Origin: Octopus bimaculoides
Taxonomy: Eukaryota
Direction of reading: 5' to 3'
Assembly: GCF_001194135.2 (NCBI RefSeq)
Contig: NC_069005.1
Location: 29,471,868-29,517,808, forward strand
Length of the DNA: 45,941 nt
In this document: positions 1,462-45,816 of the stretch, piece after piece
Position numbering within the stretch: the first letter of the stretch is position 1
Layout: each line of letters begins with the position of its first letter
Program-made: the position numbers and the translations under genes
Notes under the pieces: generated by a model
Databases searched by the model: none
Seen by the model: the letters and a program-made list of their open reading frames with translations, nothing else
Told to the model about the DNA's origin: nothing

Positions 1462-1513
<52 letters not shown>

Positions 1514-14801: not shown

Positions 14802-14875
<74 letters not shown>

Positions 14876-17800: not shown

Positions 17801-20644
17801 ATTGCATAAAAGTATCTTGAAATACTAAAGAGTAAATTTATTCAATAAAATTGCCACTGGCTTCAACCATGGCCCCCAGATGACTTCAGAATCTCCTGCA
17901 ACTCTTCTGGATGTTCTCTTTGTTTAAGTTGGTGAATGCTGCCATAATCTTTGTCTTCTTTGGTGTTACAAGGAGTTTTGTTGATCTCTCGCTCAACTGC
18001 ACCCCACACATAATAATCAAGGGGGGTTGCAGTTTGGGGAATTAGGTGTCCAGATGTTAGGGGGTCGTGTGGTTTCAGAAATCGTCTGACAGCCATGACT
18101 GGGTTCTCCTGCTTGTGTGGCATGGTGCAGAGTCCTGTTGCCAGACATAGGGTCTTCCAGCAGGACATGGAATTGTTGCAAAAATTCTATGAATTGCGTG
18201 GAGGTAATTATGTGCTGTGATGGGATTGGCCAAAGAAGATTTACAAAGAATCAGTCAGGACAGGTATGAGAATGTAGGACCTCGCAAACGAGATGGTAAT
18301 GATGTGAAAGGATGAGAACTTGCAGAAGATTGTGGTATTGCAGACTTGTGCAACTGATACTTGTATGGGGAGAAAAACAGATGTTAAAATGACAATGATG
18401 ATGACGATAATGATGATACAACATTTAATCGGGTGATGAAAATGAAGGCGATGATTATGATGCGACAGACGAGAAAGTTGGTACTTGCCAGAACAGGGTT
18501 TTGTGACAGCAAGTTTGTAAAGGAAGGGTTCACAAACAGTGTTGATGTGTCTGTCCCTAACAAATTCGATGATGATGGTGGAGATGTGACCACAGGTGCT
18601 GCACTGGAGCCAACACTACTGCTGCTGCTGCTAATGGTCTTTTTCCTGAAATTGAACAGAGCAAGTAATGATTTCTTAGCTAGAGTATGAAATCAAGTAA
18701 GGTTACACGTTTCGCTCCCAGCGCAAACTGTAGGAGAGGAACTCAGGAAACAGATCGTGAAAACAGGTGATGGAAAGTTCCTGGCTTTGGGTAAAAGAAA
18801 ATACAAGACGATCAGTTAATTATGATTTTATTCGACACATTCCCCTCTCACATTCACACACTTATTGCAGCAGTCTTTCAGTTTTTTCTAAGCCCTGTAA
18901 AGAACTTGGAAGGTTGGGCCACCAACCAGGCCTTTCACAATACCCTTAAAGCCAGGAACTTTAGCAACCCTTAGTATAGTATATATACTATTTCCAGGGC
19001 ACTAAATATGCGATGGCTGAAATGAAGAAACTATGCTTCTGTGAAATTCTGTTTTCTGCTGGGGAAAACAGTGGCCGAAACAGCTTACAAGGAAGCTACC
19101 ACGAGCAGAACACAAGTTTACGTGTGGCTTTCACGCTTTAGAAATGGTCACTTGTCTCTTGAAGACCAGCCTCATGCAGGGCGATCGTCGACCTCCCAAA
19201 TGAATGCAAAAATCACGAAAATTTATGAACTGATCTTGGAGGACCATTGCCAAACAATTGACGACCTTGCTGATATAACCGGTGTGTCCTGGAGCTCCTA
19301 CCAACGAATTTTGAGTGAGGAATTGTGAATGAAAAGGGCTGCAGCNNNNNNNNNNNNNNNNNNNNNNNNNNNNNNNNNNNNNNNNNNNNNNNNNNNNNNN
19401 NNNNNNNNNNNNNNNNNNNNNNNNNNNNNNNNNNNNNNNNNNNNNNNNNNNNNNNNNNNNNNNNNNNNNNNNNNNNNNNNNNNNNNNNNNNNNNNNNNNN
19501 NNNNNNNNNNNNNNNNNNNNNNNNNNNNNNNNNNNNNNNNNNNNNNNNNNNNNNNNNNNNNNNNNNNNNNNNNNNNNNNNNNNNNNNNNNNNNNNNNNNN
19601 NNNNNNNNNNNNNNNNNNNNNNNNNNNNNNNNNNNNNNNNNNNNNNNNNNNNNNNNNNNNNNNNNNNNNNNNNNNNNNNNNNNNCATCTGGACCGATAAA
19701 TTGCTTCAAATGGAGAATACTTTGAATGTTATAAACATGTAAAAACTCGGTGAATAAAATAATATTGCAAAATTCCGGTTTCTTTTGGGTACCCCCTTGT
19801 ATTTATGACAAAAAAAAAAAAACAGCTAAATTTCTTTCTTTAACGTTTTACATCCAAAATAGGAATTCTGAAAGACTTTTCAATAAATCTTAATTTTTAA
19901 ACACAGGATAGCTATGGGTAGTTCACCAGAATAAAACAGCAATCAAAGGGGTCCATAGACATAAAAATGGTTGAGAACTCCTGCTTTAAACATTTATCAC
20001 TTGGTGCCAAAATTCCATTGCAACAGTTGTGAGCTGTCACTGACGCGATTTCACTGAATCTCACTGCATGCATGTCTTTTGAGATGAAGTGGAACCACAT
20101 CTGCAACCAGATCGCAGTATTTGCAGAAAAAAAAAATTACAACACCAAACAATAGATATCAAAGTGAAGTCAACAGTGTTTGCATGGTTTCCGACGACTA
20201 ATATAGGTGTCTCCCACACTCGAATAGAAGAAAGAATTTCATTTACTTTTTCGTCACAATGCTTTCTCTGTTTATTTCTATGTCGCTCTCACTCGATGCC
20301 GTCGCGTCGGAGTCGCCCGATGAGTCGTTGATATTTTCGTATGATAATAGACGATCCAACAGGAAACTGAAACAAACAAACATCAACACTGCAAACTTTG
20401 ACGAAATGATCAACATTCAGCATTATAAGCAGAAAGACAATCGAAAGCACAAATGTGTGTCCATATATGTAAGTGAAATTATGCCAAATATAACTAAATT
20501 GAAAACCTTTCCCCCCTGGCCATATTGGCAATTCTGAAAACTTTTGGGTGCGAATTTTTACACAAGTAGATTTTTTAAATAATTGTTATCCTGAAAATCA
20601 CCTGCGCAAATTACACAGGCGCACAAATTACATAGGTTTTTAGG

Positions 20645-20708
<64 letters not shown>

Positions 20709-23700
20709 ATATGTATATATATATGTGTGCGTGTATATATACACACATGTACATATATGTGTGTGTGTGTATGTATAAACAAGGTTATTACCAGTTCAAA
20801 TATACTTGGGGAATATTCTAACCCATAAGTGTAGACAAATGGTGTAAATACAGCAAAACCAGCTTGCAGCATCACATACCGAGTGTGAGATGCAAGCATT
20901 TTGGAGTGGTTATCTCCTCTTCACTCACAGGAACCCAGACAGGGTGTGCTGCTGATAAACATTACAGTACAGAGCCATGCATATACATTTATAACATAAG
21001 TTTCAAAATAAAATGTGAACAAGATGATTACTTTTTGTCCCTGGAAACTTTCAGAAGTTTTCTCTGGGCCCTTCGCAATTCTTCAAGGAAACATTCTTGT
21101 TCCTGTTGATGGAAAATGATATGTGAAGATCAGATTTTATGAAATTAGTTTACACACAAGCATTATGTCTTACAAACATTCTCCTTCCAAGTGTCTTGCT
21201 GTCAGTTTCACCAAGCCTGTAACAACAAGAGCTCCCCTAACACTTGTCAATTATGCAGTGTACCCCAACCAGTTGTAGCAACATCCAATTAGATAAGTGG
21301 TTCTAAACTGGAGTCCATATGACCCTTGAAGGTCCATAGAAGATTTTATCATTAAAATTTAAGCCTTTAGCATTCAGATTACTGTCAAATGTAATTCTTA
21401 TTGATTCACATTGTTTTGAATTAACCATGTATTATCTCGTGGCCCTGATATTTCAAAAATGTGATTGTTTATTCTTAGAATGACATTGTAAAGAAGGTTT
21501 AAGAGGCCTGATCTGGCTGGTTCGAACGTAAAACAAGAAAAATATTTAGGCCCGATATGGCAGGTCCAAATGCTAAAGGGTTAATGTACAACAAACCAGT
21601 TACACTTCTACAACACAGTTCCAATTAATATCTAATTTAAAAAATACAGTATGAATATTTTAAAACATCAAATTGTTATGCGGGTCCACAGGTAAAAAAG
21701 GGTTGAGAATCACTGAGATAGGGCCAGGGCCAGCAAGAGCTAAGTAGTTTTGTCCTAGATACAGCAGTGCCGAGGTAAAAATCAAACACCCAACAGCCGA
21801 GACCAGATGCCCAATAACCCTAGTGTCTTCATCAACTCAATAAATGCTTTTGAAACACTTAGTGGGGTACCAGGGTACTGCTGGTGATTTCATTTACATA
21901 CAGTTTTTGAAATGTTTGTTGTTGTTGTTGTCCAACTCTCAAAACAGCACTGACCAAACAGACATTTGATCAAAGAGTAGCTTTTATCGTTTATCTGTTT
22001 CAGTCATTAGACTGTGGCCATGCTGGGGCACCGCCTTGAACTTTTAGTCAAAACTCCAACCCCTTTACTACCTGGAACTAGAAATTGTTGATCAAAAACA
22101 TATAAAAATGAAGAAATCTCAAAACAATAATAATAAGTGAAACACTTACATAAACCAAGAACTTTAACTTGCTTTTCAAATTCTTGTATTTTCGTTTGTA
22201 ATCAACCTGGTGATCAATTGCATTGTCTGTAAAAAATGAGAAGAGTTCATCTTTAACTCTTTAGCATTTAAAATGGCCATATCCAGCCAAAATAACTGAC
22301 CTGTTTTATCCTCAAACTGACCAGATCCAGTATCTCACACTCATCTTACAATATTATCCTTTTATTCTTTTACATGTTTCAGCCCTTTGTCATAGAAACC
22401 AGAGGTCACTCTACCTGCTAGAAATCACAACTAAATATCTTTCAAATCAAACCCTACCATTTTAAACAAGGCAGAACACATTGACTGTACAGTCCTTGAC
22501 ACTTGTTAAAACACGAGATGGTCATAACTGGAATGGTTTTGATCATGTCTGTTCAATCAGGACACACCCTGGGTGAAACAACTGTAGGTTGCTGTAACAC
22601 AGGTGTTTTTATTTATTTATTTTTTTCATAGATTAAAAGTTTGGGTGCATCTAATTAATGGTATTATTTAGGGTGGATATAAGGTGCCAAGCTGGCAGAA
22701 TTGATAGAATGCCAGACAAAATGCCTAGCAATATTTCCTCCGTCTTTACGTTCCGTCGAAGTTGACTTTGCCTTTTCTCCTTTCAGGCTCATTGAAATAA
22801 GTACCAGTCAAACACTGGGGATCATCAGGCCATGGATCATTTGGTGCAGGGCCACACAGAAAGAATAAATTTTAAAATCATATTTGTGTGTGTGTGTATA
22901 CTCAACAAGCAGGAATGTGAACACCTAATTGTATACCTTTAGCAAACTCTGATGAGATTCAACTTTTGAATGGTTTTAATTATGGTAATTAATTTATAAA
23001 GGTCTGGAATCGAAACAGCAGTTAGAGACGATGTCTATTTTATCTCCATCCCACTCAACATCAAGCTGCGTTTTATATACACAAGGAAAGGGTTTATGTT
23101 AATGGTAATTGAAGGTTCATGAAACGGGTTTGCTAAAACTGAGGTGCGTCTTGTAAGTCACCAATTATTTGATTTTGTTTTTATTGCTGGACTTCTTCCA
23201 ATGATGTCTGTTGCTTCGAAATAAAGAATATTGATTTCTAACTGTGATTCAAGAGCATAAATTGTAGATGATGCGAGAGAATATACTATTTGACAGGGGC
23301 TTAACTTTTATCGAATCCGTTACGATGAAAAGCTAGGTCAAATATTGGCAGGGTTAAAATGCAGAGTCAGAACCGAACTAAAATAATCACAACACACTTT
23401 TACTTACCGCTCTACCGATTTTGGAAATTCACAACCCTTTATAAGGGACATATTAATAGCTTTCTTTTGGCACACGAAGAATCCCACCACCATCACCAGC
23501 ATTACCGAACAGAAAATAGATAGCAGATTCGTGTTTGCCTCGCTGCAAGGGATATTATTAGCAACGTATGTAGTTTGAAATCTAATTGCAAACACATTTC
23601 GTCGAGATACATGGGTGATTTGGTTAAACTATAAATAAATCTAGTATATTAGGATGTTTACTGAACCCGGAGATAGGATTGAAAAGACGATATCAGTGGG

Positions 23701-23814
23701 ATACGAATTTAGGGCAGAGGCACATCAAACGTCAGGTACCACAAAATAACGAATAAAGCTCATTACTATTATCATGGGTTATCAAGTCGGGGTAGGATTT
23801 GATCTTGTGCGCGC

Positions 23815-23867
<53 letters not shown>

Positions 23868-24144
23868 CATTTCGTTTATTGGTAGGGAAAAAATAAAGAG
23901 ATCAATTTGGCACTGGTGAGGGCTGAACTTAGAAGAGTGAAACAGAGTGAGATAAAGGGTAAAGAAAAAAAAAATAGATAAGTCACGTTCCTTAGCGAGT
24001 GCACTACCACTTATTGTCAATAACGACAAATGTCATGAGAGTGAAAAGCGGTCAATAATGCAGAGAACAAGAAATGAAGAAACAAATGCATTACATACCT
24101 GTGTTTGTCACTGTTGCCGCACTGGATGCGGAAACAGGCATCAT
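10040..24144 (-). CDS. INO80E: INO80 complex subunit E (~262 aa, 8 coding exons)
   Basis: Exons 24144-24099, 22226-22150, 21102-21032, 20366-20247, 18645-18489, 13977-13905, 12458-12293, 10118-10040 (789 nt), phases consistent. The translation contains [60 protein letters not shown] and ends ELVIDAPQ*, matching the INO80E N-terminal coiled coil and LVID tail. AATAAA on the minus strand at 9995-10000. Confidence 0.93.
10405..10886 (+). mobile_element. Mariner relic with internal deletion
   Basis: The N-terminal HTH ([24 protein letters not shown]) is joined to the C-terminus ([27 protein letters not shown]). TIR-like end gatgacccaata. Confidence 0.85.
11440..12110 (-). mobile_element. RTE-clade LINE 3' fragment (RT thumb and C-terminus) in INO80E intron 7
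   Basis: [56 protein letters not shown] and [25 protein letters not shown], with in-frame stops. Confidence 0.85.
14556..14779. mobile_element. Mariner-derived MITE (~220 bp); related copies at 18766-18975, 43610-43710, 44100-44190
   Basis: TIRs gaggaggtgctgaaaagttcctggct / agccaggaactttttagtacccccttgta. The interior retains a transposase-like 3' end (..RGKYVE*). Confidence 0.75.
15718..16566. mobile_element. Mariner-derived fold-back element (two inverted 5' ends)
   Basis: Arms ~15718-15985 and ~16320-16566 are inverted copies. The minus strand encodes [21 protein letters not shown] and [26 protein letters not shown]. Confidence 0.8.
17384..17682 (+). mobile_element. tRNA-derived SINE family 2; copies at 29137-29397(+), 43800-44078(-), 13385-13475(-)
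   Basis: Head ggctcagtggttagag..gttcgatt, central tgtgttcttgagcaagacacttt, shared tail ggtcattcatgac. Confidence 0.85.
17696..18170 (-). mobile_element. Tc1/mariner-superfamily transposase 3' fragment
   Basis: [21 protein letters not shown] motif (cf. SPDLNPLDYxxWG). Confidence 0.7.
19010..19800 (+). mobile_element. Mariner relic spanning an assembly gap
   Basis: [59 protein letters not shown], then a gap, then the 3' end ending ggtacccccttgta. Confidence 0.8.
21296..21715. mobile_element. hAT/Charlie-type MITE (CAGTGGTTCTCAAC-like TIRs); related copies at 10893-11203, 12540-12630, 19870-19985, 27560-27780
   Basis: Ends agtggttctaaac ... gttgagaatcactg, and the copies share an internal atggaccc motif. 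Confidence 0.65.
21359..21584. mobile_element. TTAA-flanked MITE family A (piggyBac-type termini), nested in a hAT-type MITE
   Basis: ttaagcctttagcatt ... aatgctaaagggttaa. Other full copies at 28335-28550, 29879-30079, 35008-35238, 41005-41197; interrupted or partial copies at 8845-9388, 9390-9855, 22254-22365, 26308-26460, 27200-27310, 29083-29130. Confidence 0.75.
22685..22820 (+). mobile_element. SINE family 3; copies near 27760-27870(+), 44230-44420(-), 44772-44930(+)
   Basis: Shared gctggcagaat..gttgactttgccttt..cctttc..gataaaataagtaccagt. Confidence 0.7.
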
Positions 24145-24330
24145 TATTGGTTGAAAAGTGAACTTTTTAACAATCTGAAAGTGATAACAGAAAAATTAAC
24201 CAAAAATGCAAACAGAGCGGTTGCGAACTACGTCACGGCAACATTACAGTGAACTTCCGTTTCCGACAGTGGGCACCGCCGAAACTAATTTGCTTAATAC
24301 GTCATCACTTTGTGTCTTTCTTTTTAGCCA
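24145..24330. promoter_or_regulatory. Bidirectional promoter shared by INO80E (-) and RPL6 (+)
   Basis: About 170 bp separate the INO80E ATG (24144) and the predicted RPL6 TSS (24316). The interval is locally CpG-enriched, with tandem ETS-like ACTTCCG/TTCCG (24253-24265), CGTCAC (24231) and a TCT/TOP element. Confidence 0.75.
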
Positions 24331-24342
24331 GTACCTGGAATG
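24316..24342 (+). other. RPL6: RPL6 non-coding exon 1 with 5' terminal oligopyrimidine (TOP) tract
   Basis: TCT-type initiator gtCTTTCTTTTTT followed by a GTAAGT donor at 24343. It would splice to the acceptor caacAG at 28655-28656, 10 nt before the ATG. The TSS position is inferred from the motif. Confidence 0.8.
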
Positions 24343-25946
24343 TAAGTAAAATGGTTGTTTATATGTCTCCTTATTAATCTCCTTTAATCGTGGATTTTAG
24401 CCTTAAATTTATTTTCATCATCGAGAGAAAAGTAACATGAAAGATATTTATTTCTGTTTCTATGCTCTATTATTTAGATTACTCGTGAAAAATTAATATT
24501 ATTACATGTTTTTCTCCTCTAAGTCAAATGTTCATAAATGGCGATCGAATTATTTGTTAGAAGCACATGAGTTTTTTTTTTAAAGAATTGTCTACATTCA
24601 TTTAATATTCAGTAACATTGTTCTTTGTAACACAACACTTCGCACGTATTTCCCATATAATGAACCTTTTTTCCACATGGGTTACATTCACGTGTATGTG
24701 TCGATCCTCGTTAAATATATTTTCCCGTCTCCTCCATCGTGTAATCTTTCACCGTTTAGAGTTTGATACCTCGTATATACTTTTAAAAAGAAATATATAT
24801 TGTTAAAGCTGTGGACAGAAACATTTGTAAGTCTATAAATTTCCAATGGAGGGAGAACTATTCATTTTATTATTGTAATATCGGTAAATTTTCAAATTAA
24901 CACCCGCACGATTTTCACTAGGGTGTCAGGGTTAGGGTGACAAACTGAAATTCGCGTCGAGCAATAAAAGCTATATTGACCTACCGAAAGTGGACATGTA
25001 TATATACGCATATATGACTATAATCCAAGTTGTGGTCTCATCTGCGAATTCCAGCTATTATATATGTGTGTAGAACCATATGCTTACACATATACTCCAC
25101 TCGTGTTGTCCCTTTAATTATTTTTAGGGGTTAATGTTCACCTTTTTTGGCCCTGAAGTACGAATATCGTATACATTCACCACTGTCTCCTGTTGTTACG
25201 GGCTCGTTAAAAAAACCGAGTGGAATTCGAACCCGAGGAGCCTCGGGTGCTCGACATGCTTAGATAGAACATCGTCTTCAAAATTTAAAGACGAGAGAAA
25301 GGCAATGAATAATGTTAATGCGTGGTCTATAAAAACAAGACTAGTTGGTCATGGTTAGAAAGTCGCTGATTTGCGATTTTCGGTTAATATTCGTCCAGTT
25401 TTTAATAATTTGAACTTGTATACTATCTATGTGTTCAGATATATTGCTTTTTGTCGTTTTTAACCACGGACATTTTCTATGCAATAGCTGTTTAACCTAT
25501 GGTCAACCATCAATAAGCTGACCCATGACCAAAAAAATGAAACAAAACATCCCAAGCGCGATCACTCCCGTTTTTTTTCTTGTGTATATATTTATATATA
25601 TCCAATGTGTTTTCAAGAGAATAGGGTGAGATTTCAGGGACATTGGCTAATATTTCTTGCCGATCAGGTGACTACGTTGAGGCCCTCTCGTTGGTTTGTT
25701 GTAGTAATTTCAAAACGAAGCCATGGTAAAGGACCGGTGAGGGTTGGTGACAGAAAGGGCATCTGCCTGTAGAGAATTTACCACAACATGCCAGAATGGA
25801 AAGTGGTTGTTAAAACAAGGCTGGCAATTGTAGATTATGTATTGATGAAGAACTATCTGAATCGATTATCTGTGTTTGTGGATAATAACAGTTGTATTCT
25901 GTTGAAAGCTCTATTCTGTGGGCCTTGGTTCAGGAACCCGATATGA

Positions 25947-26158
25947 TTAACCCTTTTGTTATGATACTTTTGTTAAAATATACTTTCTTTCTTACAATTA
26001 AAAAAAATCTGAAAATAGCTTTGTCATTACTAAGCTGGTGTTTGGAACAAATTTACATAAGTTTCAAGGAAGGTTTTAATTTAGATGACTTGAAAACAGA
26101 AACTTTGTACCATAGTACCAAGGGCAGTTTCAGTGGGGTTGGTATGAAAAGGGTTAAC
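25947..26158. mobile_element. TTAA-flanked MITE family B; longer interrupted copy at 40942-41826
   Basis: Termini ttaacccttttgtta ... tatgaaaagggttaa. The interior matches the reverse complement of 41205-41250 plus 41610-41640. Confidence 0.65.
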
Positions 26159-26166
26159 ATCCCTAG

Positions 26167-26257
26167 GTGTGTGGCCATGATGGAAATGTCATGATCTGTC
26201 AATCCACTGATTTTATCAAGTTTGATGAGAATTTATTTTGACGCTGAGCACACACAC
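26167..26257 (+). ncRNA. Box C/D snoRNA copy 1, predicted guide for 18S rRNA Um1288-equivalent (SNORD110-like)
   Basis: Box C ATGATGG 26177, guide ATCTGTCAATCC 26194-26205, D' CTGA 26207, C' TTGATGA 26222, D CTGA 26244, terminal stem gtgtgt/acacac. Confidence 0.8.
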
Positions 26258-26824
26258 ATTAATATTTTAGTAAACTTGGCAATTTTCTACCTTTGTTTTG
26301 CGAGTTTTTAACCCTTTAGTATTCAGATTACCCTGTATTGCTTATTTCTTCACATTGTTTCAGATTAATCAAGCTTTATATCATAGATTTGAAATTTTGA
26401 TGATATGGTTGTATGTATGTTTTTAGAATAACATTGTAGGGTAAGTATTAAAGGCCAGATTTTCGTCGCTTGGAAACCACGGCCTGTTCACGGACAAAAC
26501 TTCATGCTGCATCTGAGAAAGGTTAGTTCATGTTGTTGGAGCAATAAGCAGGGTAAATCAGGTTCACAGTAAAGCTATGGGCCTTTGGTCTTTTTTTCCT
26601 CTATGTTGTATCGTTCATGGTTTCATTTCTGTTATTTAGCCACAAAGTCAGTCTTGTGCAGATCAACAAGCATTTCAGCCATGTTCATCCTCTTATGTTC
26701 GTTTTCTTTTCTTTTTTTCAAAGTATACTTGGTTTATATTTGTTTTAGACTGTGTGGTTTGAAAGGGAATTGGTTGCTGTTTGTGATGGTCAAGCAGCTA
26801 GATAGGTGCTCTATGGTTGGGACT

Positions 26825-26908
26825 GGTGTGTAGCCGTGATGTACTCAAAATCTGTCAATCCACTGAATAAATCAGTTTGATGATAAACCATTTTGACTGA
26901 GCACACAC
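26825..26908 (+). ncRNA. Box C/D snoRNA copy 2 (same 18S guide)
   Basis: Box C GTGATGT 26836, guide ATCTGTCAATCC 26850-26861, D' 26863, C' TTGATGA 26877, D 26897, stem ggtgtgt/gcacacac. Confidence 0.8.
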
Positions 26909-27412
26909 TTTTGGAAAAGGACCAGGCCCTGTCTGTTGCATGGGCCTGGGAACTGGATGTGTGACCCTACTTCCTAAAATTTTTGTGGGGTGCTTCTTAT
27001 TTTCAGGTTTAGAAAAGGGTGCATAAAAAGTAGTTTGAAGTTAGGTTTCTTCTCAAAGAACAGAAATAAAAATTTTAAAAAGAAAAAAAAGAGAAAGTGC
27101 TTGTTAAAAATAAATATATTGGACCTGGATTTGCATTTCCTAAGCAAATTTTGTTCCCAGGCCAGTGCTCTTTTGGTTCTGCTGTTTAAACCAGCCAATT
27201 CAGGCCCAAATATTTTCCTTGTTTAATGTACAAACTGGCCAGATCAAGTGTCTCAAATCTACCCTACAATGTCATTTTAAAAATAGTCAAATCAAAATGC
27301 CAAAGGTTAGAAAAAAATAAATGTGATGCAAGTTAATCGGAAAAAAAACTGCCAAGCCTGATTTCTATGATTTCATTTGTGTTCCTTTATTTTTGGTGGT
27401 GGCCACATAATT

Positions 27413-27501
27413 GGTGTGTAACCATGATGGACTGTCAAGATCTGTCAATCCACTGATTAAATTAACTTGATTGATAAACCCATTTGACACTGAGTTCACA
27501 C
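27413..27501 (+). ncRNA. Box C/D snoRNA copy 3 (same 18S guide)
   Basis: Box C ATGATGG 27424, guide 27440-27451, D' 27453, degenerate C' near 27467, D 27490, stem gtgtgtaac/gttcacac. Confidence 0.75.
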
Positions 27502-28666
27502 TATTTTTTGGCCCTTGTCATTGTTGAAAACTTGGCTCTGATTTAGTTGGGTTCTATCTGTTTAGTCTAGGTCCACATGACCCTTGAGGGGCCACATAGG
27601 ATTTTGTTGTTAAAGTTTATATTTGGTTTATATTTCTACAATACACAAAATATTTAATGTAAAAATATAATTTTGGTATTGAGTTTATGCTAATTCTTTC
27701 AAATTTATAACTTTGACAAGTTTGTGTGGGATTTTTTCTAAATTGTGAGTGGTTGGCGGACTTGTTGAAGCATCAGGAAAAAATATCTTGCAGTATTTGG
27801 TTTTGAGTTCAAATCCTGCTGTGGTCGCCTTTTCCTTTTATTCCTTTTGGGATCAATGAAATATGGGGTGGTGAGGGGGTGATGGTATCAACTAAACCTG
27901 CCCCCACTAAATTTCACTCTTTGTGCCTCCATGGTGGCAGGCCCCTCATCTGGGATGCCACATGCTGAAACCTCCAGCAGCAAACTGCCACAGTATTGAT
28001 CACTCTGACAAGTTTATGGTCGAGTCTGTGACAGTGGAGACCTCCAGCATTCTTGGCTCCCAGACCATATTCCTGTTCTCTGCTATTGGAGTGGAGGTGG
28101 CTATCTGCAAGTGTGAGTCAGGGTGGCTTTACACCAAATCTCCCTTGTCTTTCTCTGGCACAATACCGTTTCCATTTTCTCTGCTGGGACCAGGAGGTGG
28201 TCTGAATCAAGAGAACATAAGAATTTTGTAGTTCACTGCACAAACAATAACCTACTTCGTTGTTGACTGATTCACTGCGAACCTGTTCTATAGTAAGGAT
28301 ATATAAATATTCACTCCTCCAGAAACAGTTTATTTTAGCCCTTTAGCATTTAATCCAAGCCAAATATTCTTCCTGTTTAATGTTCAAACCAACCGGGTCC
28401 AACCTCTCACACCTACCATACAATGTCATTCTAAAAATATACAACCACACCATTGAAATGTCAAAGCTACAAAATAGTGTGATTAATTCAAAATAATATG
28501 AATAAATAAGCAATACATTTGACAAAGAAATCTGAATGCTGAAGGGTTAAGAATGGTGATCAGTAGAACAATGGGGAATGTAATAACTTGTCTTGCAGTA
28601 TTAGTTGATGTTTGGTGTTAGAAACTTATTACAATGCTTTTCATATTCTCCAACAGTTCATTCATT

Positions 28667-30931
28667 ATGGAAGGAAAAGAGAAAACGAAGCCAGTGACTA
28701 AGGAAGCAAAGAGCGCATCAAACAAGCGCCGACCTCGTAATCCGGTCATATCTTCAACGGGTTTGAGGAGGTTTTCTAGATCTCGGGTATACAAGAGGAG
28801 GAGAATTTTCATCAAAAAGGAACAACCCAAGACAAAAGCAGTTAAGAAGCCCAAACCTGCAAAGTATGTCGTGAAGCCTATTGGTGGTGAGAAAAATGGC
28901 GAAACGAGGAAAGTCCGTGTTAAGCGATTGGTGAGTCATTGTATTTCTGTTTACTGTGGGGTTGAGTGATATTACTGTGTTGCTTCAAGCCAACATGACA
29001 TTATATTGTCTCTTGGCAAATTATGTTACTACTTTAGTTCACGACGGCTTTGGAATAGTTTCTTAGTCATGTTAGTATGTTTAACCTTTTAGTATTTAAA
29101 GTGGCCATATCTAGCTCAATTTTCTGTTCAAACTGTGAAGGCGCCTGGCTCAGTGGTTAGAGTGTCGGGCTTACAATCATGGGGTAGTAAGTTTGATTTC
29201 CAGACTGGATTGTGTTGTGTTCTTGAGCAAGACACTTTATTTCATGTTGCAATGCTGTATTGGCCTTTGGGTAGCATGGGGAGGGGAGGCTGGTATGCAT
29301 GTGCAACTGGTGGTCTTCCATAAATAACCTTGCCCAGACTTGTGTCTCAGAGGTGGGTGGGCTTCCCTGGTGTAATCCCATGGTCATTCATGACTCAAGT
29401 TCCAGATCGCCCACACCTGTTCTACAATGTCATTCTAATAACATACAAAGAATGCACCTTCTGTTCAGGGGGCCAGCAGATAATTTGGCTCATGCAGTGT
29501 ATTGTGGGTGTCGCCCAAGTATTTTTCTTACATCTGGAACCCTGCTACGCTTACGCTCGTAGACATCCTACACTACATCCAAAAAGGGAGAGAGGTTGAC
29601 TGATTGGCATAAAGCCCTTGCACTCCTGACAATCTATATACTGTCTTTTTTTCTGCCCCTAAAAGACCTCTACTCCTTGGAACTGGCCTGTTCACTCAGG
29701 CATTCCCAAGCTTCATGCTAATCACTTCACCAAATCCGTAGAAGTCCTTCCTTTTAAGCTCTATGCAGTTTTTTATTCACTTCCTGTTTGAGAGGAACAT
29801 TAATGAGGTCAATCTTACTGGTTCAGAATAACCTGTGAAAGCCATGTGCACTGCCCCTTCCTCCGGGCACAGCAAGTATTAACCCCTTAGCATTTAAACT
29901 GGCCATATCCAGCCTGAATATTCAACTTGTTTTATCTTCAAACTGACCAGATCTGGCATCTCACATTTACCCTTTAATGTTATTCTAGAAATAATCTCAA
30001 AGCTATGATATGATGCATGTCTAATTCATATCAATGTGAATGAATAAGCATTACACTTGACTGAATGCTAAAGGGTTAAAGGAAGGGGAAAAAAGACCCT
30101 GATGGTTTCAATGTTTACAAAAGGGAAAAGAATTTTGTTTCTTGCACCTGTGTGGTCGGTAGCAAATTTCCATTCTGCTTTTCTTTGTTTCTGTGGACAG
30201 TCTGTTTCCCTGACTACTAATTTGATTTCAATGTCTCAGAACTGAAAGGAGATATATTTTGTGTAGTGTGAGTTGGATCATAATCTTCTCCACTTTGTTG
30301 TGTGTAGAAATATTGACCCACAACTTCAGGGCTTAAATTTATGGTCCATCCATTCGTCAGTAACAGTGGTAGATTGGTAAGTTACAGCATTTAGATTACA
30401 TTTTACTCAACTTGTGGTAATGGAACTAAAGTTATGGTATCTTGATCCTAATTTTGATTAGTTGCTTGGTTGTCAAACTTTCTATAAACTTTTTAGGAAT
30501 GAATAAATGGTAGATGCTGTAGATATAACAGTGACCTTTATACAGTATGAAATTTTTAGTAAAAAAAAAATAGATGAGTAAAAAGTGAAGTAGAGCTAAA
30601 ATTCTGACTTACATTTTTTAAGTTGTTTTTTTTTTTTACCCCCAGCCTCGCCATATTCCAACACAAGAAGGTAGAAAAAGACAGTCGAAACACAGGAAGC
30701 CATTCTCTAAGCATAAGCGTAATCTGCGCAAATCTATTGTTCCTGGAACAGTGCTTATTCTGCTAGCAGGAAGGCACAAGGGAAAGGTATGTATATTTCT
30801 TCAGTTTTGTGGATGTTAACTAATATCCATCTGTCTTTTCTTTTCTCTCTCTCACTCTTTCCTGATCAGTTGCTGTTTAAATTTATGTGCAATAAACTGG
30901 TTATATTTCAAACACAAAATATTTAAACTTT

Positions 30932-30975
<44 letters not shown>

Positions 30976-31804
30976 CCTAATATTTAATATTTAATCATGA
31001 AAAACTTATAATAGGAATTTTTAAACATCGAATGACTATGAGGGCCCCACCTCCCTGAGTAAAACAGGAGTCGTTCGATATAATGTAATCAGTTGGCTGA
31101 AGATTGTTAAGGCTAAGAAACTACCTTAGATCTTCCTGGTCATGTGCCAGGATTTGCATTTAGCACGGTTGTTGCTATTAATTTTTGTGCCAAAGTTTTA
31201 AGATTTGTGTCATGAATTGAAAGGTTGTACAGGAGTGAGTCATCACTTTGACGCTATGCCCTAATAGCTTTTTCTCTTGGTGAGGAATTATTTTCTGTAC
31301 AGAATTTAAAATGGTTATTAGTGGAAGAAACTTGTGGATGGTTACTTGTTGAATATTAAAGATTAATTTTTACTAATCAAAATATTCATGTGATTTTTGG
31401 TGCACAAAGAAAAGGTCCTTAATCAATTCTGTTGCATAACTTTTGTCTCAAAGTGACCCTAATTACAAGTTATTTCAATAAAATATAAAAAATTTTGTTT
31501 AAACATCACCATCGCAAATGTCATCAGCTAATATTCAATTTTAATATAGAAGAACTGTGCATATCACTAGATTATCAATTGCATTTAATGCACATAAGAA
31601 CAGGTGTATCATAAAGGTCGAATAAAAATGAAATGAATACACAGCCCTAGTCAAATCGTCCGGCCCATGGACGACAGACATTAAATGATGATGATATGAT
31701 GTAATAAAGATTTGCAAAACAAATTACATCGAAACTTGTCACTCACCTTACAGGTAAATAAAAAGTAAAAACGAAATGAATTTGAAAAATATTTATTAGA
31801 TCAA

Positions 31805-31877
<73 letters not shown>

Positions 31878-34800
31878 TATTCACACAATATTTCTGTGCT
31901 GGAAACTTGTAAAACATCCCAGTCTACATATTGCAGCCTTGCAGAATGAGCATTGGAAAGCAGTTTTAATTTATTTATTTATTATTATTTTTTCTATATC
32001 CAATGGCAGCCCTTTTCTACTAGCAATTACTGTAGCACATGTACATGTCATCACAGCTTCTAAATCCACTGCAAGTTTAACCAAACTGAAAAAAAATTGA
32101 TAAAAAAATAATATACGGCCATGGTTACAGTATGGAAGCGATGAATTACAGACCACATCGTACTATAGGCCATGCTGACATACATAGTTGTCCCGTTTCC
32201 CTATATAAAAACTAAACCCACAACAGTACCCTGTATTTGCTTTGCAAATCTTCCAAGCTTTGATCCCCCACTTTGTGGGTTTTCCTGGCATATTTTGTCG
32301 GAAACATGCTCTGCCTTTATTCCTCACTATGGATAAGGTGTATACCAGGGTTGTAAAGTGTTTTATATGCAAACGCAGTTGATGAAGGGTCTTATTTTAA
32401 ATAAGGGACTAAGTTTGGTTCTCCATGTACTGGGGTACTACTAGTGTCTCTCACATGTAAATAGTTTTACAAATCATGTCCTAACAACTGGAAATGTATT
32501 GGAATCCAAAAGGTGCATGATTACTCCACTTGAATTTGTTTCAAAAATTAATTGAAATAAAAAGTGAGTATTCTATTAATTTCTGCATAATTCATTAAAT
32601 ACCAGAATGGGTTTGTTAGCAAACGTCCCTTATTTTTGTTTTCATTTTTAATATATTGCTTCTTCAGTACTGATGATAACAAGAATTGTGAAAACTCTAG
32701 GATAATTCTTTCTTTTCCTCTAGCGTGTTGTATTCCTGAAGCAGCTTAGCAGTGGTCTGCTCCTTGTGACAGGTAAGGGCTTCTATAGTATTTCTACCAT
32801 TTGGCCTTTCTTTTACCATGTTACTCCTGCTGTTGTCTCAACTGAATTTATAAAATGAATTGGGTTGGTCTCATAATGCAACTAGCTTTTCTGTTTATTT
32901 CTATATTGGGGTAGTGTTCAGAGCATGGCAAGGAAGTTACTCGAATAAATCTACAAAATTTTCATTTCAGAGTTACTCTAATTACATGAATTCAGTAAAA
33001 TATACAATTTGCCATCCTTTAAAACGTCATTTTCAATATTTGGGATAGATGACAATAGTCAACGATTGTGTGCAAATAAAACTGCATGTTCATGCAAAGA
33101 GGCAAGAAGGGAGCACAAAATATTATTATTGAAGTTTGGGGAAAGATTATATTATCCTAGTGAAGAAGGGTGGCAACAAAATTTTCACAAGTTATATCAA
33201 CGATGAGGTGCATTCTAAGGATACGTTATGTATATACACACACACAGAGGGAATTGTATTCGTGTCCACATCCATTAGTAGCCCTCCCTTATTTGCAATC
33301 AGAATGGCATATGTTTGTTGCCATAGCTTGGAAGTTCTTAACTAATTTCACTAGAATGTGGTAATCCATGTTTTCTTAGAGGGCTTATCGCTTATCTAAC
33401 CATGCTAACCTGCACCATTGTCTTTCTGGTACCAGAGTAGAGCCACGACATTAATCTGTCTCACTTCATGGATTGTCAAACTTTCTTCACCTGAAATGAA
33501 TTGTGAAAAATGTTGGGTGTTTGTGATGGACTGTTTTTTTTTTCTATGAGGAGTTGCTTCCCTTTGACTTTGATGTTCTATTGTATTATATGGAACATAA
33601 TCTCCCTCTGCTGGTGCCTAGTGATTGTGGCACAGTTTCAATAAATTAAAATCATTGATGTTGGAGACCTAGCTGTTCCACCTGTATAGTCTGAATAGCT
33701 ATTTATTGCAGTTATCATCATCATCAAAGGTATAAATGAAAGATAATAGTCAGTAGAGAGCCTGGTTGGAATGTGAAACCTCATTATCAATTTATTTTCA
33801 CCCACTCCTTGTGTATACATGTCTCTCTCTCTCTCTGTATTTTGCTCTATGTACTTAATGTATGCTGATTCGATTGTTTCAGGTCCATTTGCAATGAACG
33901 GTTGCCCACTGCGTCGTGTCAACCAGATCTATGCAATTGCCACCACAGCTAGAGCTGATGTGAGCAAGGTTCAGATACCAGTCAGGATAAACGATAACTA
34001 TTTCAAAAGAAAGGCCAAGAAGGCTAATAAACACAAAGAAGTGGAATTGTTTGAAACAGAGAAGAAGGTAATTATTAACTTTTTGGATCTTGTCCACCCT
34101 TTAGTGCACAGAGTAATCTGTCGAGTATCATGTTAGTTTATTTATATTGTTTTGAATTAATCTTATATTATCTTGTTAAGTGATTTTTTAGTGTTAGAAC
34201 GACATTTTAGGGTTCAGGTGGGAGGCCAGTTTCAACATGAAACAGATAAAATTATTTTGGCTGGAAATCACTGGTTTGAATGCTAATGGGTCCAGACAAC
34301 AATTTACTAAACCATGGTGGTCTTCAGTATATTTTTTTTTTTTTATCTTGTTTGCTTGTTTCAGTTATTGTACTGTGCAAAAATGTATGTTGTTGGCACT
34401 CCATCGCTTACGACGTCGAGGATCCCAGTTGATCCGATCAACGGAACAGCCTGCTCATGAAATTAACGTGCAAGTGGCTGAGCACTCCACAGACACGTGT
34501 ACCCTTAATCAAGTTCTCGGGGAGATTCAGCGTGACACAGTGTGACAAGGCTGACCCTTTGAATTACAGGCACAACAGAAACGGGGAGAAAGTTGTGGTG
34601 AGAGAGTACAGCAGGGTTCGCCACCATCCCCTGCTGGAGCCTCGTGGAGCTTTAAGTGTTTTCGCTCAATAAACACTCACAACGCCCGGTCTAAGAATTG
34701 AAACCGCTAGTCCGCTGCCCTAACCACTGGGCCATTGCGCCTCCACTGCAAATGTATATTGCCTTAAAAAATTCAATCCCAGTATTTTTTATGCTACTTA

Positions 34801-36218
34801 TTTTATCAGTCTCTTTTCCTGGGCTGCTACATTATTGGAGACACATAGACGCATACATGCATATGATAGGGCTTCCACTCAGTTTCCATCTATTGATTTC
34901 ACTCAGACACAGCTGGACTGCTTCATTAAATTCATTTCAATAATTAACACAAGCAGTTAAGAACAGAATCAATATTTGTTTTCTATTTACCATTCAAGAT
35001 GAGGTCTTTAACCCTTTAGCATTTGAACCGGCCATATCCGGCCAAAAGTATTCTGCCTATTCTATGTTCAAACTGGCATGATCTGGTCTCTCACACCAAC
35101 CCTACAATATCATTTAAAAAAATTAACAGCTACCTCATCAAAATCTCATAGCTACAAGATAATGCATGATTAGTTCAAAACAATGTGGATAAAAGAAGCA
35201 TTAATTATGGTAGAATAATGTGAACACTAAAAGGTTAATGTCAGTGTACTTGCCTGAGAAAATGCTTCATGAAGTGGTGTTAAGATGTTCGGCTTGCAAT
35301 ATCGAGCTGGTTCCCTATTTTGCTGTGCTACTATTATAACCAATAAATGTGGAGACATTTCTTAAGTGTGTGTTAGGTGCGTCTGCTCAGTTGAAGTGTA
35401 AGCTGGGTTGTCATAAAATGCTGACTTAACGGGGAACATTTTTACTATATTTTGAACCTTGAGAACAGCTTAATGTTAATGTTATCATATTCTTCTTTGA
35501 TGACAGTGGAGATATAAAGGATATTAGGTGACCATCCACATTGTAGTAACAGTCAATGAATGGTGTAAGGAGGTACAACTATTTTTTTTCCCATAAAACT
35601 GCTATTAATGGTTTGTGGTACAGTGTCATCATCATCGTTTAACGTCCGCTTTCCATGCTAGCATGGGTTGGACGATTTGACTGAGGACTGGTGAAACCGG
35701 ATGGCAACACCAGGCTCCAATCTAATTTGGCAGAGTTTCTACAGCTGGATGCCCTTCCTAACGCCAACCACTCAGAGTGTAGTGGGTGCTTTTACGTGTC
35801 ACCCGCACGAAGGCCAGTCAGGCGGTACTGGCAACGGCCACGCTCAAAGTGGTGTCTTTTATGTGCCACCCACACAGTGTAGGTATTAATTTTAATTTCT
35901 GCAGAGACCAATCTATTTCGTGTTTCCATTATCAAGTAGAGTTATTTTGCATGCGTGTGTGTGTGTGTGTGTGTCTGTCTATCTCACAGATTGTCATTGT
36001 AGAAAAGCGTGGCAATGGTGGACATTTTTCTAAATGTTGTATTGTTTTCGTTTCAGGAGTATACCCTGACAAAAGAACGTAAAGAGGACCAGGTAGAGGT
36101 GGACAAGCAGGTTCTTGATGCTATCAAGAAGCATAAGGACAGAAAACAACTGAAGGGGTACTTGCAGTCAATGTTTTCTTTGAAAAATAAAATGTACCCA
36201 CACAAGATGTTATTCTGA
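28667..36218 (+). CDS. RPL6: 60S ribosomal protein L6 (eL6), 266 aa
   Basis: Coding exons 28667-28930, 30646-30786, 32724-32772, 33883-34067, 36057-36218 (801 nt), all GT-AG and in phase. Hallmarks: [83 protein letters not shown] at 36243-36248. Confidence 0.97.
31880..32520 (-). mobile_element. Degenerate, internally deleted piggyBac (PGBD-like) transposase relic in RPL6 intron 3
   Basis: KGRACFRQNMPGKPTKWGIKAWKICKANTGYCCGFSFYIGK (32163-32372) continues past one stop as YDVV..PY..GRILFFYQFF..CATVIASRKGLP (31971-32156). It is followed by the C-terminal Cys-rich motif KTAFQCSFCKAAICRLGCFTSFQH* (~31882-31968). Confidence 0.85.
35626..35872 (-). mobile_element. Retroposon 3' tail with (GAT)n end; copies at 570-760, 3810-3960, 4490-4600, 5620-5780, 9498-9760, 16710-16830
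   Basis: Shared catgctagcatgggttgga...ctggatgcccttcctaacgccaaccact. The 9498-9760 copy interrupts a family A MITE. Confidence 0.7.
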
Positions 36219-45600: not shown

Positions 45601-45816
45601 AAGGGTGATTTGTGACTGGTTTATGTCTGGGATGGTAGTTTGTGACTTAGTAATGTCTGGAAGTGTCATTTGTGACTGGCTTAATTTTGGATCAGACATC
45701 TGTTCTTGGCTTGCATCTTGTACTGTTATTTTTCTGATTTCAGTATTCTTATCAATTGTTTCAGCAGAAAAAGTTGGAAATAATATTTCTGAACCAGAAG
45801 ATGATGCCACATCCAT
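39648..45816 (-). CDS. Gene D: uncharacterised protein (~752 aa) with SQ-decapeptide repeats and a coiled coil
   Basis: Exons 45816-44946, 44603-44494, 43186-43090, 40828-39648, all GT-AG with phases 1,0,1 consistent. An in-frame TAA just after the acceptor at 45847 supports ATG 45816 as the start. A possible extra phase-0/0 exon lies at 43435-43322. Confidence 0.72.
45181..45680 (-). repeat. Coding 30-bp minisatellite, ~17 units, consensus peptide SQLTLPDTNL
   Basis: 30-nt periodicity is directly visible (aagagtcaactgtgacaggtttgtgtctgg on +). The central 8 units are nearly identical and the flanking units are degenerate. Confidence 0.95.

What the first reader, a model, noticed from the sequence alone, without database searches (positions are those of the whole stretch)
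26167..27501. Three diverged box C/D snoRNAs with one invariant 18S guide in RPL6 intron 1
Seen: three ~85-90-nt units, 659 and 588 bp apart. They have diverged except for boxes C/D'/C'/D, a terminal stem with co-varying changes and an identical 12-mer ATCTGTCAATCC before D'. Established: this 12-mer is the reverse complement of the conserved 18S segment GGAUUGACAGAU, and the fifth-nucleotide rule points to its first U. From memory, that is human Um1288, guided by the single-copy SNORD110/HBII-55 in NOP56. Inference: these are functional, triplicated paralogues in a different host gene.
Basis: partly seen in the sequence, partly recalled or inferred. Interest (0 to 1): 0.8.

Follow-up and report, generated by a model that had tools for sequence, protein, structure and literature searches.

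The report
Three octopus SNORD110-type snoRNAs in RPL6
The first intron of the Octopus bimaculoides ribosomal protein L6 gene carries three old, diverged copies of a well-known small nucleolar RNA (SNORD110/snoR14 family) that should direct one methyl mark on 18S ribosomal RNA; it is real and well conserved but an ordinary new member of a known family.

Summary
Three box C/D units of 84-90 nt lie at 26166-26255, 26825-26908 and 27413-27501 (+ strand). All share the guide ATCTGTCAATCCA followed directly by box D'.

The window is Octopus bimaculoides. The units lie in a 4315-nt 5'UTR intron of RPL6 (24342-28656). I located its exon 1 from a conserved TOP tract plus GTAAGT donor, and found the same motif at the start of related RPL6 mRNAs.

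O. sinensis and Argonauta hians have the same three-copy cluster. Across all nine copies, guide+D' (17/17) and D (4/4) are invariant, while flanks are about 28 % identical. The terminal stem is 87.5 % paired, with one clean G-C/A-U compensatory pair.

Rfam places unit 1 in snoR14 (40.8 bits, cutoff 40). Units 2 and 3 match SNORD110 only weakly. Both families belong to clan CL00076.

Guide and spacing equal the human SNORD110 consensus, so the predicted target is the equivalent of human 18S Um1288. Human SNORD110 is hosted in NOP56.

RPL6 loci of a chiton, a mussel and two gastropods lack the snoRNA.

Expression, methylation and the octopus 18S sequence were not testable here.

Verdict: a new member of a known kind. 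The only unusual point is three snoRNAs kept in one intron.

The parts
24316..24341 (+). RPL6 exon 1 (non-coding, TOP-type 5'UTR; start approximate): CTTTCTTTTTAGCCAGTACCTGGAAT
   Evidence: Conserved in O. sinensis and Argonauta and followed directly by a conserved GTAAGT (A2). The same TTGTC..CTTTT..AGCCAC..GGAAT motif lies at the adaptor-marked 5' end of related RPL6 mRNA contigs L006-L010.
24342..28656 (+). RPL6 intron 1 (4315 nt, within the 5'UTR), host of the three snoRNAs
   Evidence: The GTAAGT donor and the CAG acceptor 10 nt before the ATG are both conserved in three octopods. Apart from the block at the 5' edge (through window 24544) that holds the shared promoter, exon 1 and the intron start, the three units are the only blocks inside the intron conserved with Argonauta.
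26166..26255 (+). snoRNA unit 1 (90 nt). Stem 26166-26176; box C 26177-26183 (ATGATGG); guide 26194-26206; D' 26207-26210; C' 26223-26228 (TGATGA); D 26244-26247; stem 26248-26255
   Evidence: Rfam snoR14 RF01280 at 40.8 bits against a cutoff of 40. Model R1 scores 102.6 bits. The O. sinensis orthologue is 99 % identical and scores 41.4 bits in Rfam.
26825..26908 (+). snoRNA unit 2 (84 nt). Box C 26836-26842 (GTGATGT); guide 26850-26862; D' 26863-26866; C' 26878-26883 (TGATGA); D 26897-26900
   Evidence: Weak SNORD110 RF00610 match at 23.7 bits, below the cutoff of 64. R1 scores 95.7 bits. Conserved in O. sinensis at 94 %.
27413..27501 (+). snoRNA unit 3 (89 nt). Box C 27424-27430 (ATGATGG); guide 27440-27452; D' 27453-27456; C' 27468-27474 (TGATTGA, 1-nt insertion); D 27490-27493
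   Evidence: Weak SNORD110 match at 21.5 bits. R1 scores 106.1 bits. The clearest orthologue is Argonauta copy 3: 82 % identity over the body and 81 % in the variable parts.
28657..28930 (+). RPL6 exon 2 (ATG at 28667)
   Evidence: Splice-consistent gene model translating to a 266-aa protein 100 % identical to O. bimaculoides RPL6.
30646..36218 (+). Remaining RPL6 coding exons: 30646-30786, 32724-32772, 33883-34067 and 36057-36218 (stop)
   Evidence: The introns between them hold no further non-coding block conserved with Argonauta, except microsatellites and a dispersed repeat.

Best explanation
These are three paralogous, functional box C/D snoRNA genes of the SNORD110 (HBII-55) / snoR14 family. 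They lie in the sense orientation in the 4.3-kb first (5'UTR) intron of Octopus bimaculoides RPL6. Proposed mechanism: they are co-transcribed with RPL6 from its TOP promoter and released from the spliced intron. Each assembles a C/D snoRNP, in which SNU13 binds the C/D kink-turn and NOP56, NOP58 and fibrillarin join. The 12-13-nt element just upstream of box D' pairs with 18S rRNA 5'-GGAUUGACAGAU-3'. Fibrillarin then 2'-O-methylates the first U, which pairs with the fifth guide nucleotide upstream of D'. This is the equivalent of human Um1288 and Arabidopsis Um1232. What is shown: the sequence anatomy, family similarity, intron position, and strong purifying selection on guide and boxes in nine copies from three octopod species. 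What is inferred: transcription with RPL6, processing, snoRNP assembly, and methylation of the octopus 18S. The triplication predates the Octopus-Argonauta split. RPL6 hosting is not shared with the chiton, mussel or gastropod loci examined.
For: Exact guide three times, 0/100 shuffles reach this. Rfam places unit 1 in snoR14 above cutoff, and units 2 and 3 match SNORD110 of the same clan with the identical guide-to-D' spacing. There are three copies upstream of the RPL6 ATG in O. sinensis and A. hians. In the nine-copy alignment, guide 13/13, D' 4/4 and D 4/4 columns are invariant and box C is 5/7, while flanks show 0.27-0.29 identity. The longest invariant run is 17 columns, reached in 16 of 100000 permutations. 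The terminal stem is 87.5 % paired, against 7-68 % when partners are slid. One pair is G-C in 6 copies and A-U in 3, with none unpaired; the covariation score is reached by 5/500 shuffles. Exon 1, donor and acceptor are conserved and match mRNA 5' ends. The units are the only Argonauta-conserved blocks in the interior of the intron. Literature: SNORD110 -> Um1288; AtsnoR14 Um1232 = HBII-55 Um1288 (PMC3511168); Neurospora CD44 listed with S. pombe snR82 (PMC2780460). C' boxes with insertions remain active in yeast (PMC3116282), so the UGAUUGA C' of unit 3 need not be inactivating.
Against: There are no expression data: no small-RNA reads, northern or RiboMeth-seq. Units 2 and 3, and all three Argonauta copies, are below Rfam gathering scores. 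Position 7 of box C is G, U or C rather than A. C' is degenerate in some copies (UGAUUGA, UGACGA, UGAAUGU). Exon 1 is inferred from conservation and from mRNAs of other species, not from octopus transcripts. Covariation rests on a single pair. Three snoRNAs in one intron departs from the usual animal one-per-intron layout, so processing may be less efficient or different.
Confidence: 0.85

Rival explanations
1. Only one copy is functional, most plausibly unit 1 or unit 3. The others are decaying duplicates that have not yet lost their boxes.
For: Only unit 1 passes an Rfam cutoff. Unit 3 has an insertion in C'. Argonauta copies 1 and 2 have shortened D'-C' loops, and copy 1 has a degenerate C' (UGAAUGU). 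These two copies also score lowest with R1, at 78.6 and 81.9 bits.
Against: All nine copies keep guide, D' and D without a single change, while sequence a few nucleotides outside each unit is randomised (0.27-0.29 identity). A dead copy would have decayed likewise over the Octopus-Argonauta distance. The compensatory G-C to A-U change keeps the stem intact in the 'weaker' copies.
Confidence: 0.1
2. The units are not RPL6-intronic. They would belong to a separate transcription unit between INO80E and RPL6: either an independent promoter, or a non-coding snoRNA host gene with one snoRNA per intron and small exons between them.
For: Exon 1 was not confirmed with octopus transcripts. Pyrimidine-tract+AG sites lie 49-108 nt downstream of units 1 and 2 in O. 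bimaculoides. Animals mostly follow one snoRNA per intron.
Against: Those acceptor-like sites are not conserved even in O. sinensis, and none is present in Argonauta. Between the conserved promoter/exon-1 block (ending at 24544) and exon 2, nothing but the three units is conserved with Argonauta. The conserved TOP exon and GTAAGT donor lie upstream of the units, and the conserved acceptor lies downstream. The mRNA 5' ends of related RPL6 genes carry the exon-1 motif.
Confidence: 0.08
3. The repeated 17-mer is a DNA-level element, for example a thrice-repeated transcription-factor site of the INO80E/RPL6 region, and not an RNA guide.
For: It is an invariant short motif repeated in a region near a bidirectional promoter.
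Against: Each 17-mer is embedded in a complete C/D architecture: C, D', C', D and a terminal stem with a compensatory change. All copies lie on the RPL6 sense strand. The sequence equals the guide of a curated snoRNA clan. The units lie 1.8-3.2 kb from the promoter block.
Confidence: 0.02

Closest known systems
Human SNORD110 (HBII-55), Rfam RF00610, clan CL00076
   Same: Box C/D snoRNA. The guide AUCUGUCAAUCC lies one nucleotide from D' in both, so the predicted target is the same (18S Um1288 equivalent). Both are intronic in a gene of the ribosome-biogenesis/translation apparatus.
   Different: The human copy is hosted in NOP56 (NOL5A), with other snoRNAs in other introns. The octopus copies are hosted in RPL6 intron 1, three in the same intron. 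Outside the guide and boxes there is little similarity: 21-24 bits against a cutoff of 64.
Plant snoR14 (AtsnoR14), Rfam RF01280, clan CL00076
   Same: Best Rfam match of unit 1, at 40.8 bits against a cutoff of 40. It shares the D' guide (G/A)UCUGUCAAUCCaCUGA and the homologous site, Um1232.
   Different: The snoR14 consensus carries a different, well-conserved sequence upstream of box D (AUCCCGACAGGUU), which I read as a probable second guide. The octopus copies have no conserved element in register with D.
Neurospora crassa CD44 / S. pombe snR82
   Same: Listed as functional homologues of snoR14 and HBII-55. CD44 uses a D' guide for 18S Um1227 and is intronic (PMC2780460).
   Different: These are fungal. 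CD44 has a second guide, for 26S Cm776. No sequence comparison was made here.
Multi-copy same-guide intronic snoRNAs in ribosomal-protein genes, e.g. human U18A/B/C
   Same: Several paralogues with the same guide are kept in one ribosomal-protein host gene. U18A/B/C are listed for one site; that their host is RPL4 is from memory.
   Different: In vertebrates such paralogues sit in separate introns, one per intron. Here all three share one intron.

Membership tests
Box C/D snoRNA (methylation guide) | Box C (RUGAUGA) near the 5' end and box D (CUGA) near the 3' end | tested here: met
   RUGAUG is present in 9/9 copies, with the 7th position G, U or C rather than A. CUGA is invariant in 9/9.
Box C/D snoRNA (methylation guide) | Short terminal stem bringing C and D together | tested here: met
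   Eight named pairs are 87.5 % paired, against 7-68 % in slid controls. One pair is G-C in 6 copies and A-U in 3.
Box C/D snoRNA (methylation guide) | Internal D' and C' boxes | tested here: met
   D' CUGA is invariant. C' is UGAUGA, UGACGA, UGAUUGA or UGAAUGU. Divergent C' boxes are active in yeast.
Box C/D snoRNA (methylation guide) | At least 10 nt of antisense element ending next to D or D', complementary to the species' own rRNA | not testable with these tools
   The guide is identical to the family guide for a site conserved from plants to human. No octopus 18S sequence was accessible.
Box C/D snoRNA (methylation guide) | Stable 70-120-nt RNA bound by fibrillarin/NOP56/NOP58, with the target nucleotide methylated | not testable with these tools
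   No expression or modification data were available.
SNORD110/snoR14 clan (Rfam CL00076) | Score at or above a member family's gathering threshold | tested here: inconclusive
   Unit 1 scores 40.8 against 40 (snoR14), so it is met. Units 2 and 3 score 23.7 and 21.5 against 64 (SNORD110), so they are not met. O. sinensis unit 1 scores 41.4. No Argonauta copy passes.
SNORD110/snoR14 clan (Rfam CL00076) | D' guide AUCUGUCAAUCC with the target U opposite the 5th nucleotide upstream of D' | tested here: met
   Identical sequence and spacing in 9/9 copies and in both Rfam consensus sequences.
Vertebrate SNORD110 locus | Hosted in a NOP56 intron | tested here: not met
   The octopus copies are in RPL6 intron 1. 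A vertebrate-like metagenomic contig, L019, shows the NOP56 arrangement. This is a feature of the locus, not of the RNA family.

The most novel reading that the evidence does not exclude
Three snoRNPs sit in one intron, and the layout has been kept since before the Octopus-Argonauta split. Exonucleolytic trimming of the debranched intron would stop at the outer snoRNPs. The locus may therefore also produce snoRNA-capped long non-coding RNAs (sno-lncRNAs) of about 680-1340 nt spanning 26166-26908, 26825-27501 or 26166-27501, as described for mammalian introns that hold two snoRNAs (PMC11028025). If no such RNAs accumulate, octopods must use an endonucleolytic, plant-like route to separate intronic snoRNAs. 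A related possibility is that the diverged non-guide parts give the three paralogues distinct extra targets or tissue-specific use.
Probability: 0.2. Interest if true: 0.45.

Novelty: new member of a known kind. Interest (0 to 1): 0.25.

Why it matters
This adds a documented, evolutionarily validated snoRNA cluster to cephalopods. My full-text search found only bulk Rfam counts for cephalopod snoRNAs. It predicts that the 18S Um1288-equivalent methylation exists in octopus. It gives a clean example of host-gene relocation (NOP56 in vertebrates, RPL6 in octopods) and of long-term retention of same-guide paralogues. It also shows that Rfam thresholds would detect at most one of three copies in Octopus and none in Argonauta. 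The three-in-one-intron layout makes the locus a convenient natural test of how animal cells process intronic snoRNA clusters. None of this changes current understanding of snoRNA biology.

Tried and rejected
**Memory-based leads that were wrong or unsupported**
- I first recalled yeast snR55/Um1269 as the counterpart. A published table equates Um1269/snR55 with human Um1326/U33 instead, so I dropped it.
- I also recalled Drosophila 'Me18S-U1356a-c' as a related three-copy case. No paper in the library mentions it. My own guess, from the numbering, is that it belongs with the U33 site rather than this one. Not used.

**Structural hypotheses tested and rejected**
- Mini-exons between the units (one snoRNA per intron): the acceptor-like sites are not conserved.
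- A second methylation guide before box D: only UGAC is conserved, and its register to D shifts by 2 nt in O. bimaculoides unit 2.
- An inner helix (spacer GUCA with pre-D UGAC) could explain that conserved UGAC. It is 86 % paired, but covariation is not above shuffles (145/500). I report it only as possible.

**Searches for further copies**
- Other snoRNAs in the remaining RPL6 introns: none found by Rfam at E<=1 or by conservation with Argonauta.
- The same snoRNA in RPL6 +-10 kb of a chiton, a mussel and two gastropods: none found by 11-mer or by model R1.

**Other checks**
- The 307-aa O. sinensis RPL6 model as evidence against the acceptor: rejected as an annotation artefact.
- The metagenome scan for guide+D' mostly returned chance matches. 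L019 is a NOP56-hosted copy, probably vertebrate. L040 has two tandem copies from an unknown eukaryote.

- The octopus NOP56 locus. A protein search seeded with a vertebrate-like NOP56 would list only vertebrates.
- Any decapodiform or nautilus genome, and the octopus 18S.

Full report
**Observation**

The 12-mer ATCTGTCAATCC occurs three times in the 45.9-kb window, at 26194, 26850 and 27440, all on the + strand. None of 100 dinucleotide-preserving shuffles gave three matches, even allowing one mismatch.

Reading the sequence and aligning the units gives three units:
- unit 1: 26166-26255, 90 nt
- unit 2: 26825-26908, 84 nt
- unit 3: 27413-27501, 89 nt

Each unit reads, from 5' to 3':
- a 5' stem (GGUGUGU..CC)
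- box C (A/G)UGAUG(G/U)
- a 7-10-nt spacer
- the guide AUCUGUCAAUCCA
- D' (CUGA)
- an 11-12-nt loop
- C' (UGAUGA, or UGAUUGA in unit 3)
- 13-15 nt of variable sequence
- D (CUGA)
- a 3' stem (G(C/U)(A/U)CACAC)

**Host gene and organism**

A tblastn probe, followed by inspection of splice sites, gave five coding exons: 28667-28930, 30646-30786, 32724-32772, 33883-34067 and 36057-36218. They translate without interruption to a 266-aa RPL6. That protein is 100 % identical to Octopus bimaculoides RPL6 (P0001). Its locus L001 matches the window, with window coordinate = L001 coordinate + 18666.

The ATG lies 10 nt after a pyrimidine-rich CAG acceptor ending at 28656, which implies a non-coding exon 1 upstream. 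The upstream neighbour is INO80E on the opposite strand, with its CDS start at about 24144.

**Locating exon 1**

I compared the 4.5-kb INO80E-RPL6 interval with Argonauta hians. Only two kinds of conserved block appear: window 24028-24544, and the three snoRNA units.

Inside the first block, all three octopods share ...TTTGTGTC(T/G)TTCTTTTTAGCCA..CTGGAA(T/G)|GTAAGT. This is a TOP-type pyrimidine start followed about 26 nt later by a consensus donor at 24342 (A2).

As an independent check, I fetched transcript-like contigs of the nearest non-octopod RPL6 proteins (L006-L010). They are probably decapodiform cephalopods, but their origin is not established. Their sequences begin with template-switch adaptor tails. 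These are followed by ..TTGTC.TCCTTTTC.A.AGCCACG(G)AAT.., the same motif.

Intron 1 is therefore 24342-28656, 4315 nt. The corresponding introns are 6289 nt in O. sinensis and 3822 nt in Argonauta. All three units lie inside it, in the sense orientation.

The 307-aa O. sinensis RPL6 model reads through the acceptor. The same frame is closed by stop codons in the other two species, so I regard that model as an annotation artefact.

**Family**

Rfam places unit 1 in snoR14 (RF01280) at 40.8 bits, against a cutoff of 40. In permissive mode, units 2 and 3 match SNORD110 (RF00610) at 23.7 and 21.5 bits, against a cutoff of 64. Both families belong to clan CL00076.

The printed consensus sequences carry the same guide at the same distance from D':
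- SNORD110: AUCUGUCAAUCC-C-CUGA
- snoR14: GUCUGUCAAUCC-a-CUGA
- octopus: AUCUGUCAAUCC-A-CUGA

Counting back from D', the fifth nucleotide is the A that pairs with the first U of 5'-GGAUUGACAGAU-3'.

The literature supports the target assignment:
- SNORD110 is assigned to human 18S Um1288 (bioRxiv 10.64898/2026.09.11.751006).
- AtsnoR14/Um1232 and HBII-55/Um1288 are listed as the same clan and site (PMC3511168).
- Neurospora CD44 and S. pombe snR82 are listed as counterparts (PMC2780460).
- Human SNORD110 is placed in NOL5A/NOP56 with SNORA51 and SNORD56/57/86 (PMC4159348).

My own initial recollection that yeast snR55/Um1269 is the counterpart was wrong. That site corresponds to human Um1326/U33 (PMC8817022).

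**Selection**

O. sinensis (L002) and Argonauta hians (L003) each have three copies between RPL6 exon 1 and the ATG. Start-to-start spacings are 1101/761 bp in O. sinensis and 603/495 bp in Argonauta.

Conservation across the nine-copy alignment (A3):

| Segment | Invariant columns or mean pairwise identity |
|---|---|
| Guide | 13/13 invariant |
| D' | 4/4 invariant |
| D | 4/4 invariant |
| Box C | 5/7 invariant |
| C' | 4/7 invariant |
| Spacer | 0.56 identity |
| D'-C' loop | 0.48 identity |
| Pre-D region | 0.63 identity |
| Flanks | 0.27-0.29 identity |

The 17-column invariant run was reached in only 16 of 100000 permutations of the invariant and variable columns.

The named terminal stem is 87.5 % paired, against 7-68 % when partners are slid. 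One pair is G-C in six copies and A-U in three, with none unpaired. The covariation score was reached by 5 of 500 shuffles. My first attempt was mis-registered by one column; its '+1' control is the intended structure.

Covariation is therefore real but rests on one pair.

Copy 3 has a clear Argonauta orthologue, with 0.81 identity in the variable parts. Orthology of copies 1 and 2 is blurred. Either way, the triplication predates the Octopus-Argonauta split. From memory, that split is on the order of 100 My or more. The random flanks are consistent with a deep divergence.

**Distribution**

A covariance model built from the nine copies (R1) finds only those nine in the window and the octopod loci.

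RPL6 loci with 10-kb flanks were examined from a chiton (L004), a mussel (L005) and two gastropods (L127, L128). All keep the INO80E/RPL6 head-to-head arrangement. None contains even the 11-nt guide core, nor a credible R1 match. RPL6 hosting is thus not a general molluscan feature. Decapodiforms and Nautilus could not be examined.

A metagenome scan with guide+D' gave mostly chance hits, with two informative exceptions:
- L019 is a clean C/D snoRNA in the intron after NOP56 exon 2. The exon hits Pfam NOP5NT at 6e-11, and the exons are about 80 % identical to my from-memory copy of human NOP56. It is probably vertebrate DNA.
- L040 carries two tandem copies 364 bp apart, from an unknown AT-rich eukaryote.

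Only unit 1 passes Rfam cutoffs, in both Octopus species, and no Argonauta copy does. Routine annotation would therefore miss most of the cluster.

**How it probably works**

The snoRNAs would be transcribed as part of the RPL6 pre-mRNA from a TOP promoter, which couples their supply to ribosome production. They would be excised with intron 1 and trimmed to the snoRNP-protected ends. They would then guide fibrillarin to the Um1288-equivalent uridine through the D' guide and the C'/D' motif.

The C' of unit 3 has a 1-nt insertion. Yeast experiments show that divergent C' motifs, including one with an insertion in C', direct methylation about as well as a consensus motif (PMC3116282).

The region before box D is not a conserved second guide. 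Only UGAC is conserved, and its register to D shifts in one copy. It may instead pair with GUCA in the spacer, a helix that is 86 % paired but without significant covariation.

**What is unusual**

A review states that animal genomes 'predominantly' follow one snoRNA per intron. It also states that two snoRNAs in one intron can yield snoRNA-ended lncRNAs (PMC11028025).

I looked for hidden exons that would restore the one-per-intron layout. Acceptor-like sites occur after units 1 and 2 in O. bimaculoides, but they are not conserved in O. sinensis or Argonauta. Nothing between the units is conserved.

The simplest reading is that three snoRNAs share one intron. That implies either endonucleolytic separation or the production of sno-lncRNAs of about 680-1340 nt. 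I could not test this.

**Verdict**

It is a new, lineage-specific set of members of an old and well-described snoRNA family. Both the host-gene change and the paralogue retention are of a kind already documented as common (PMC3511168). Interest is modest.

Noticed in passing
window 24028-24544; also L002-L005, L127, L128: INO80E (- strand) and RPL6 (+ strand) are arranged head to head in octopods, a chiton, a mussel and two gastropods. In O. bimaculoides only about 170 bp separate the INO80E ATG (24144) from the RPL6 TOP start (about 24316). That interval holds conserved ACGTCA and ACTTCCG motifs, which suggests a shared bidirectional promoter.
   Followed up: partly
L002:10001-10117 (O. sinensis), equivalent to window about 28550-28666: The 307-aa O. 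sinensis RPL6 model has an N-terminal extension that reads through the conserved intron-1 acceptor. The same frame contains stop codons in O. bimaculoides and Argonauta, so this is probably an annotation artefact.
   Followed up: yes
L002:14880-14898 (O. sinensis RPL6 intron before the exon equivalent to window 33883): An isolated partial copy of guide+D' (TGATCTGTCAATCCTCTGA) with no box C nearby. It has no counterpart in O. bimaculoides. It may be a relic fragment or a chance match.
   Followed up: partly
window 35626-35773: A dispersed repeat in the last RPL6 intron. It matches at least four places, in both orientations, in the Argonauta RPL6 locus at 68-79 % identity. It may be a SINE-like element.
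   Followed up: no
window 1454-1570, 14774-14919, 20641-20781, 23807-23877, 37379-37948: (TA)n/(TG)n microsatellites give many sub-threshold Rfam 'miRNA' matches (mir-297, mir-3149, mir-1277 and others). These are low-complexity artefacts.
   Followed up: no
window 17863-18233 (-) and 19041-19328 (+): ORF fragments that, by eye, resemble a mariner/Tc1-type transposase (..[17 protein letters not shown]..). They lie next to an assembly gap at 19346-19684. The window has six N-runs totalling 1681 N.
   Followed up: no
window 26184-26193, 27431-27439 and the pre-D segments 26229-26243, 27475-27489: The spacer before the guide repeats part of the guide (cUGUCAAg AUCUGUCAAUCC). It can pair with the conserved UUGAC(A) just before box D. 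This helix is 86 % paired across the nine copies, but its covariation is not significant.
   Followed up: partly
L040:4042-4489 (-), metagenome contig JACCEA010951166.1: Two tandem C/D-like units 364 bp apart carrying the same guide, from an unknown AT-rich eukaryote. Tandem duplication of this family is therefore not confined to octopods.
   Followed up: partly
L003:581-700 (+), Argonauta hians, within the span of the INO80E gene: A 5S rRNA match above Rfam's gathering score (47 bits against 38).
   Followed up: no
window 39648-45816 (-): The downstream neighbour of RPL6 is a 752-aa gene on the minus strand with weak or faint pentapeptide-repeat Pfam hits. The coordinates are mapped from L001.
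   Followed up: no
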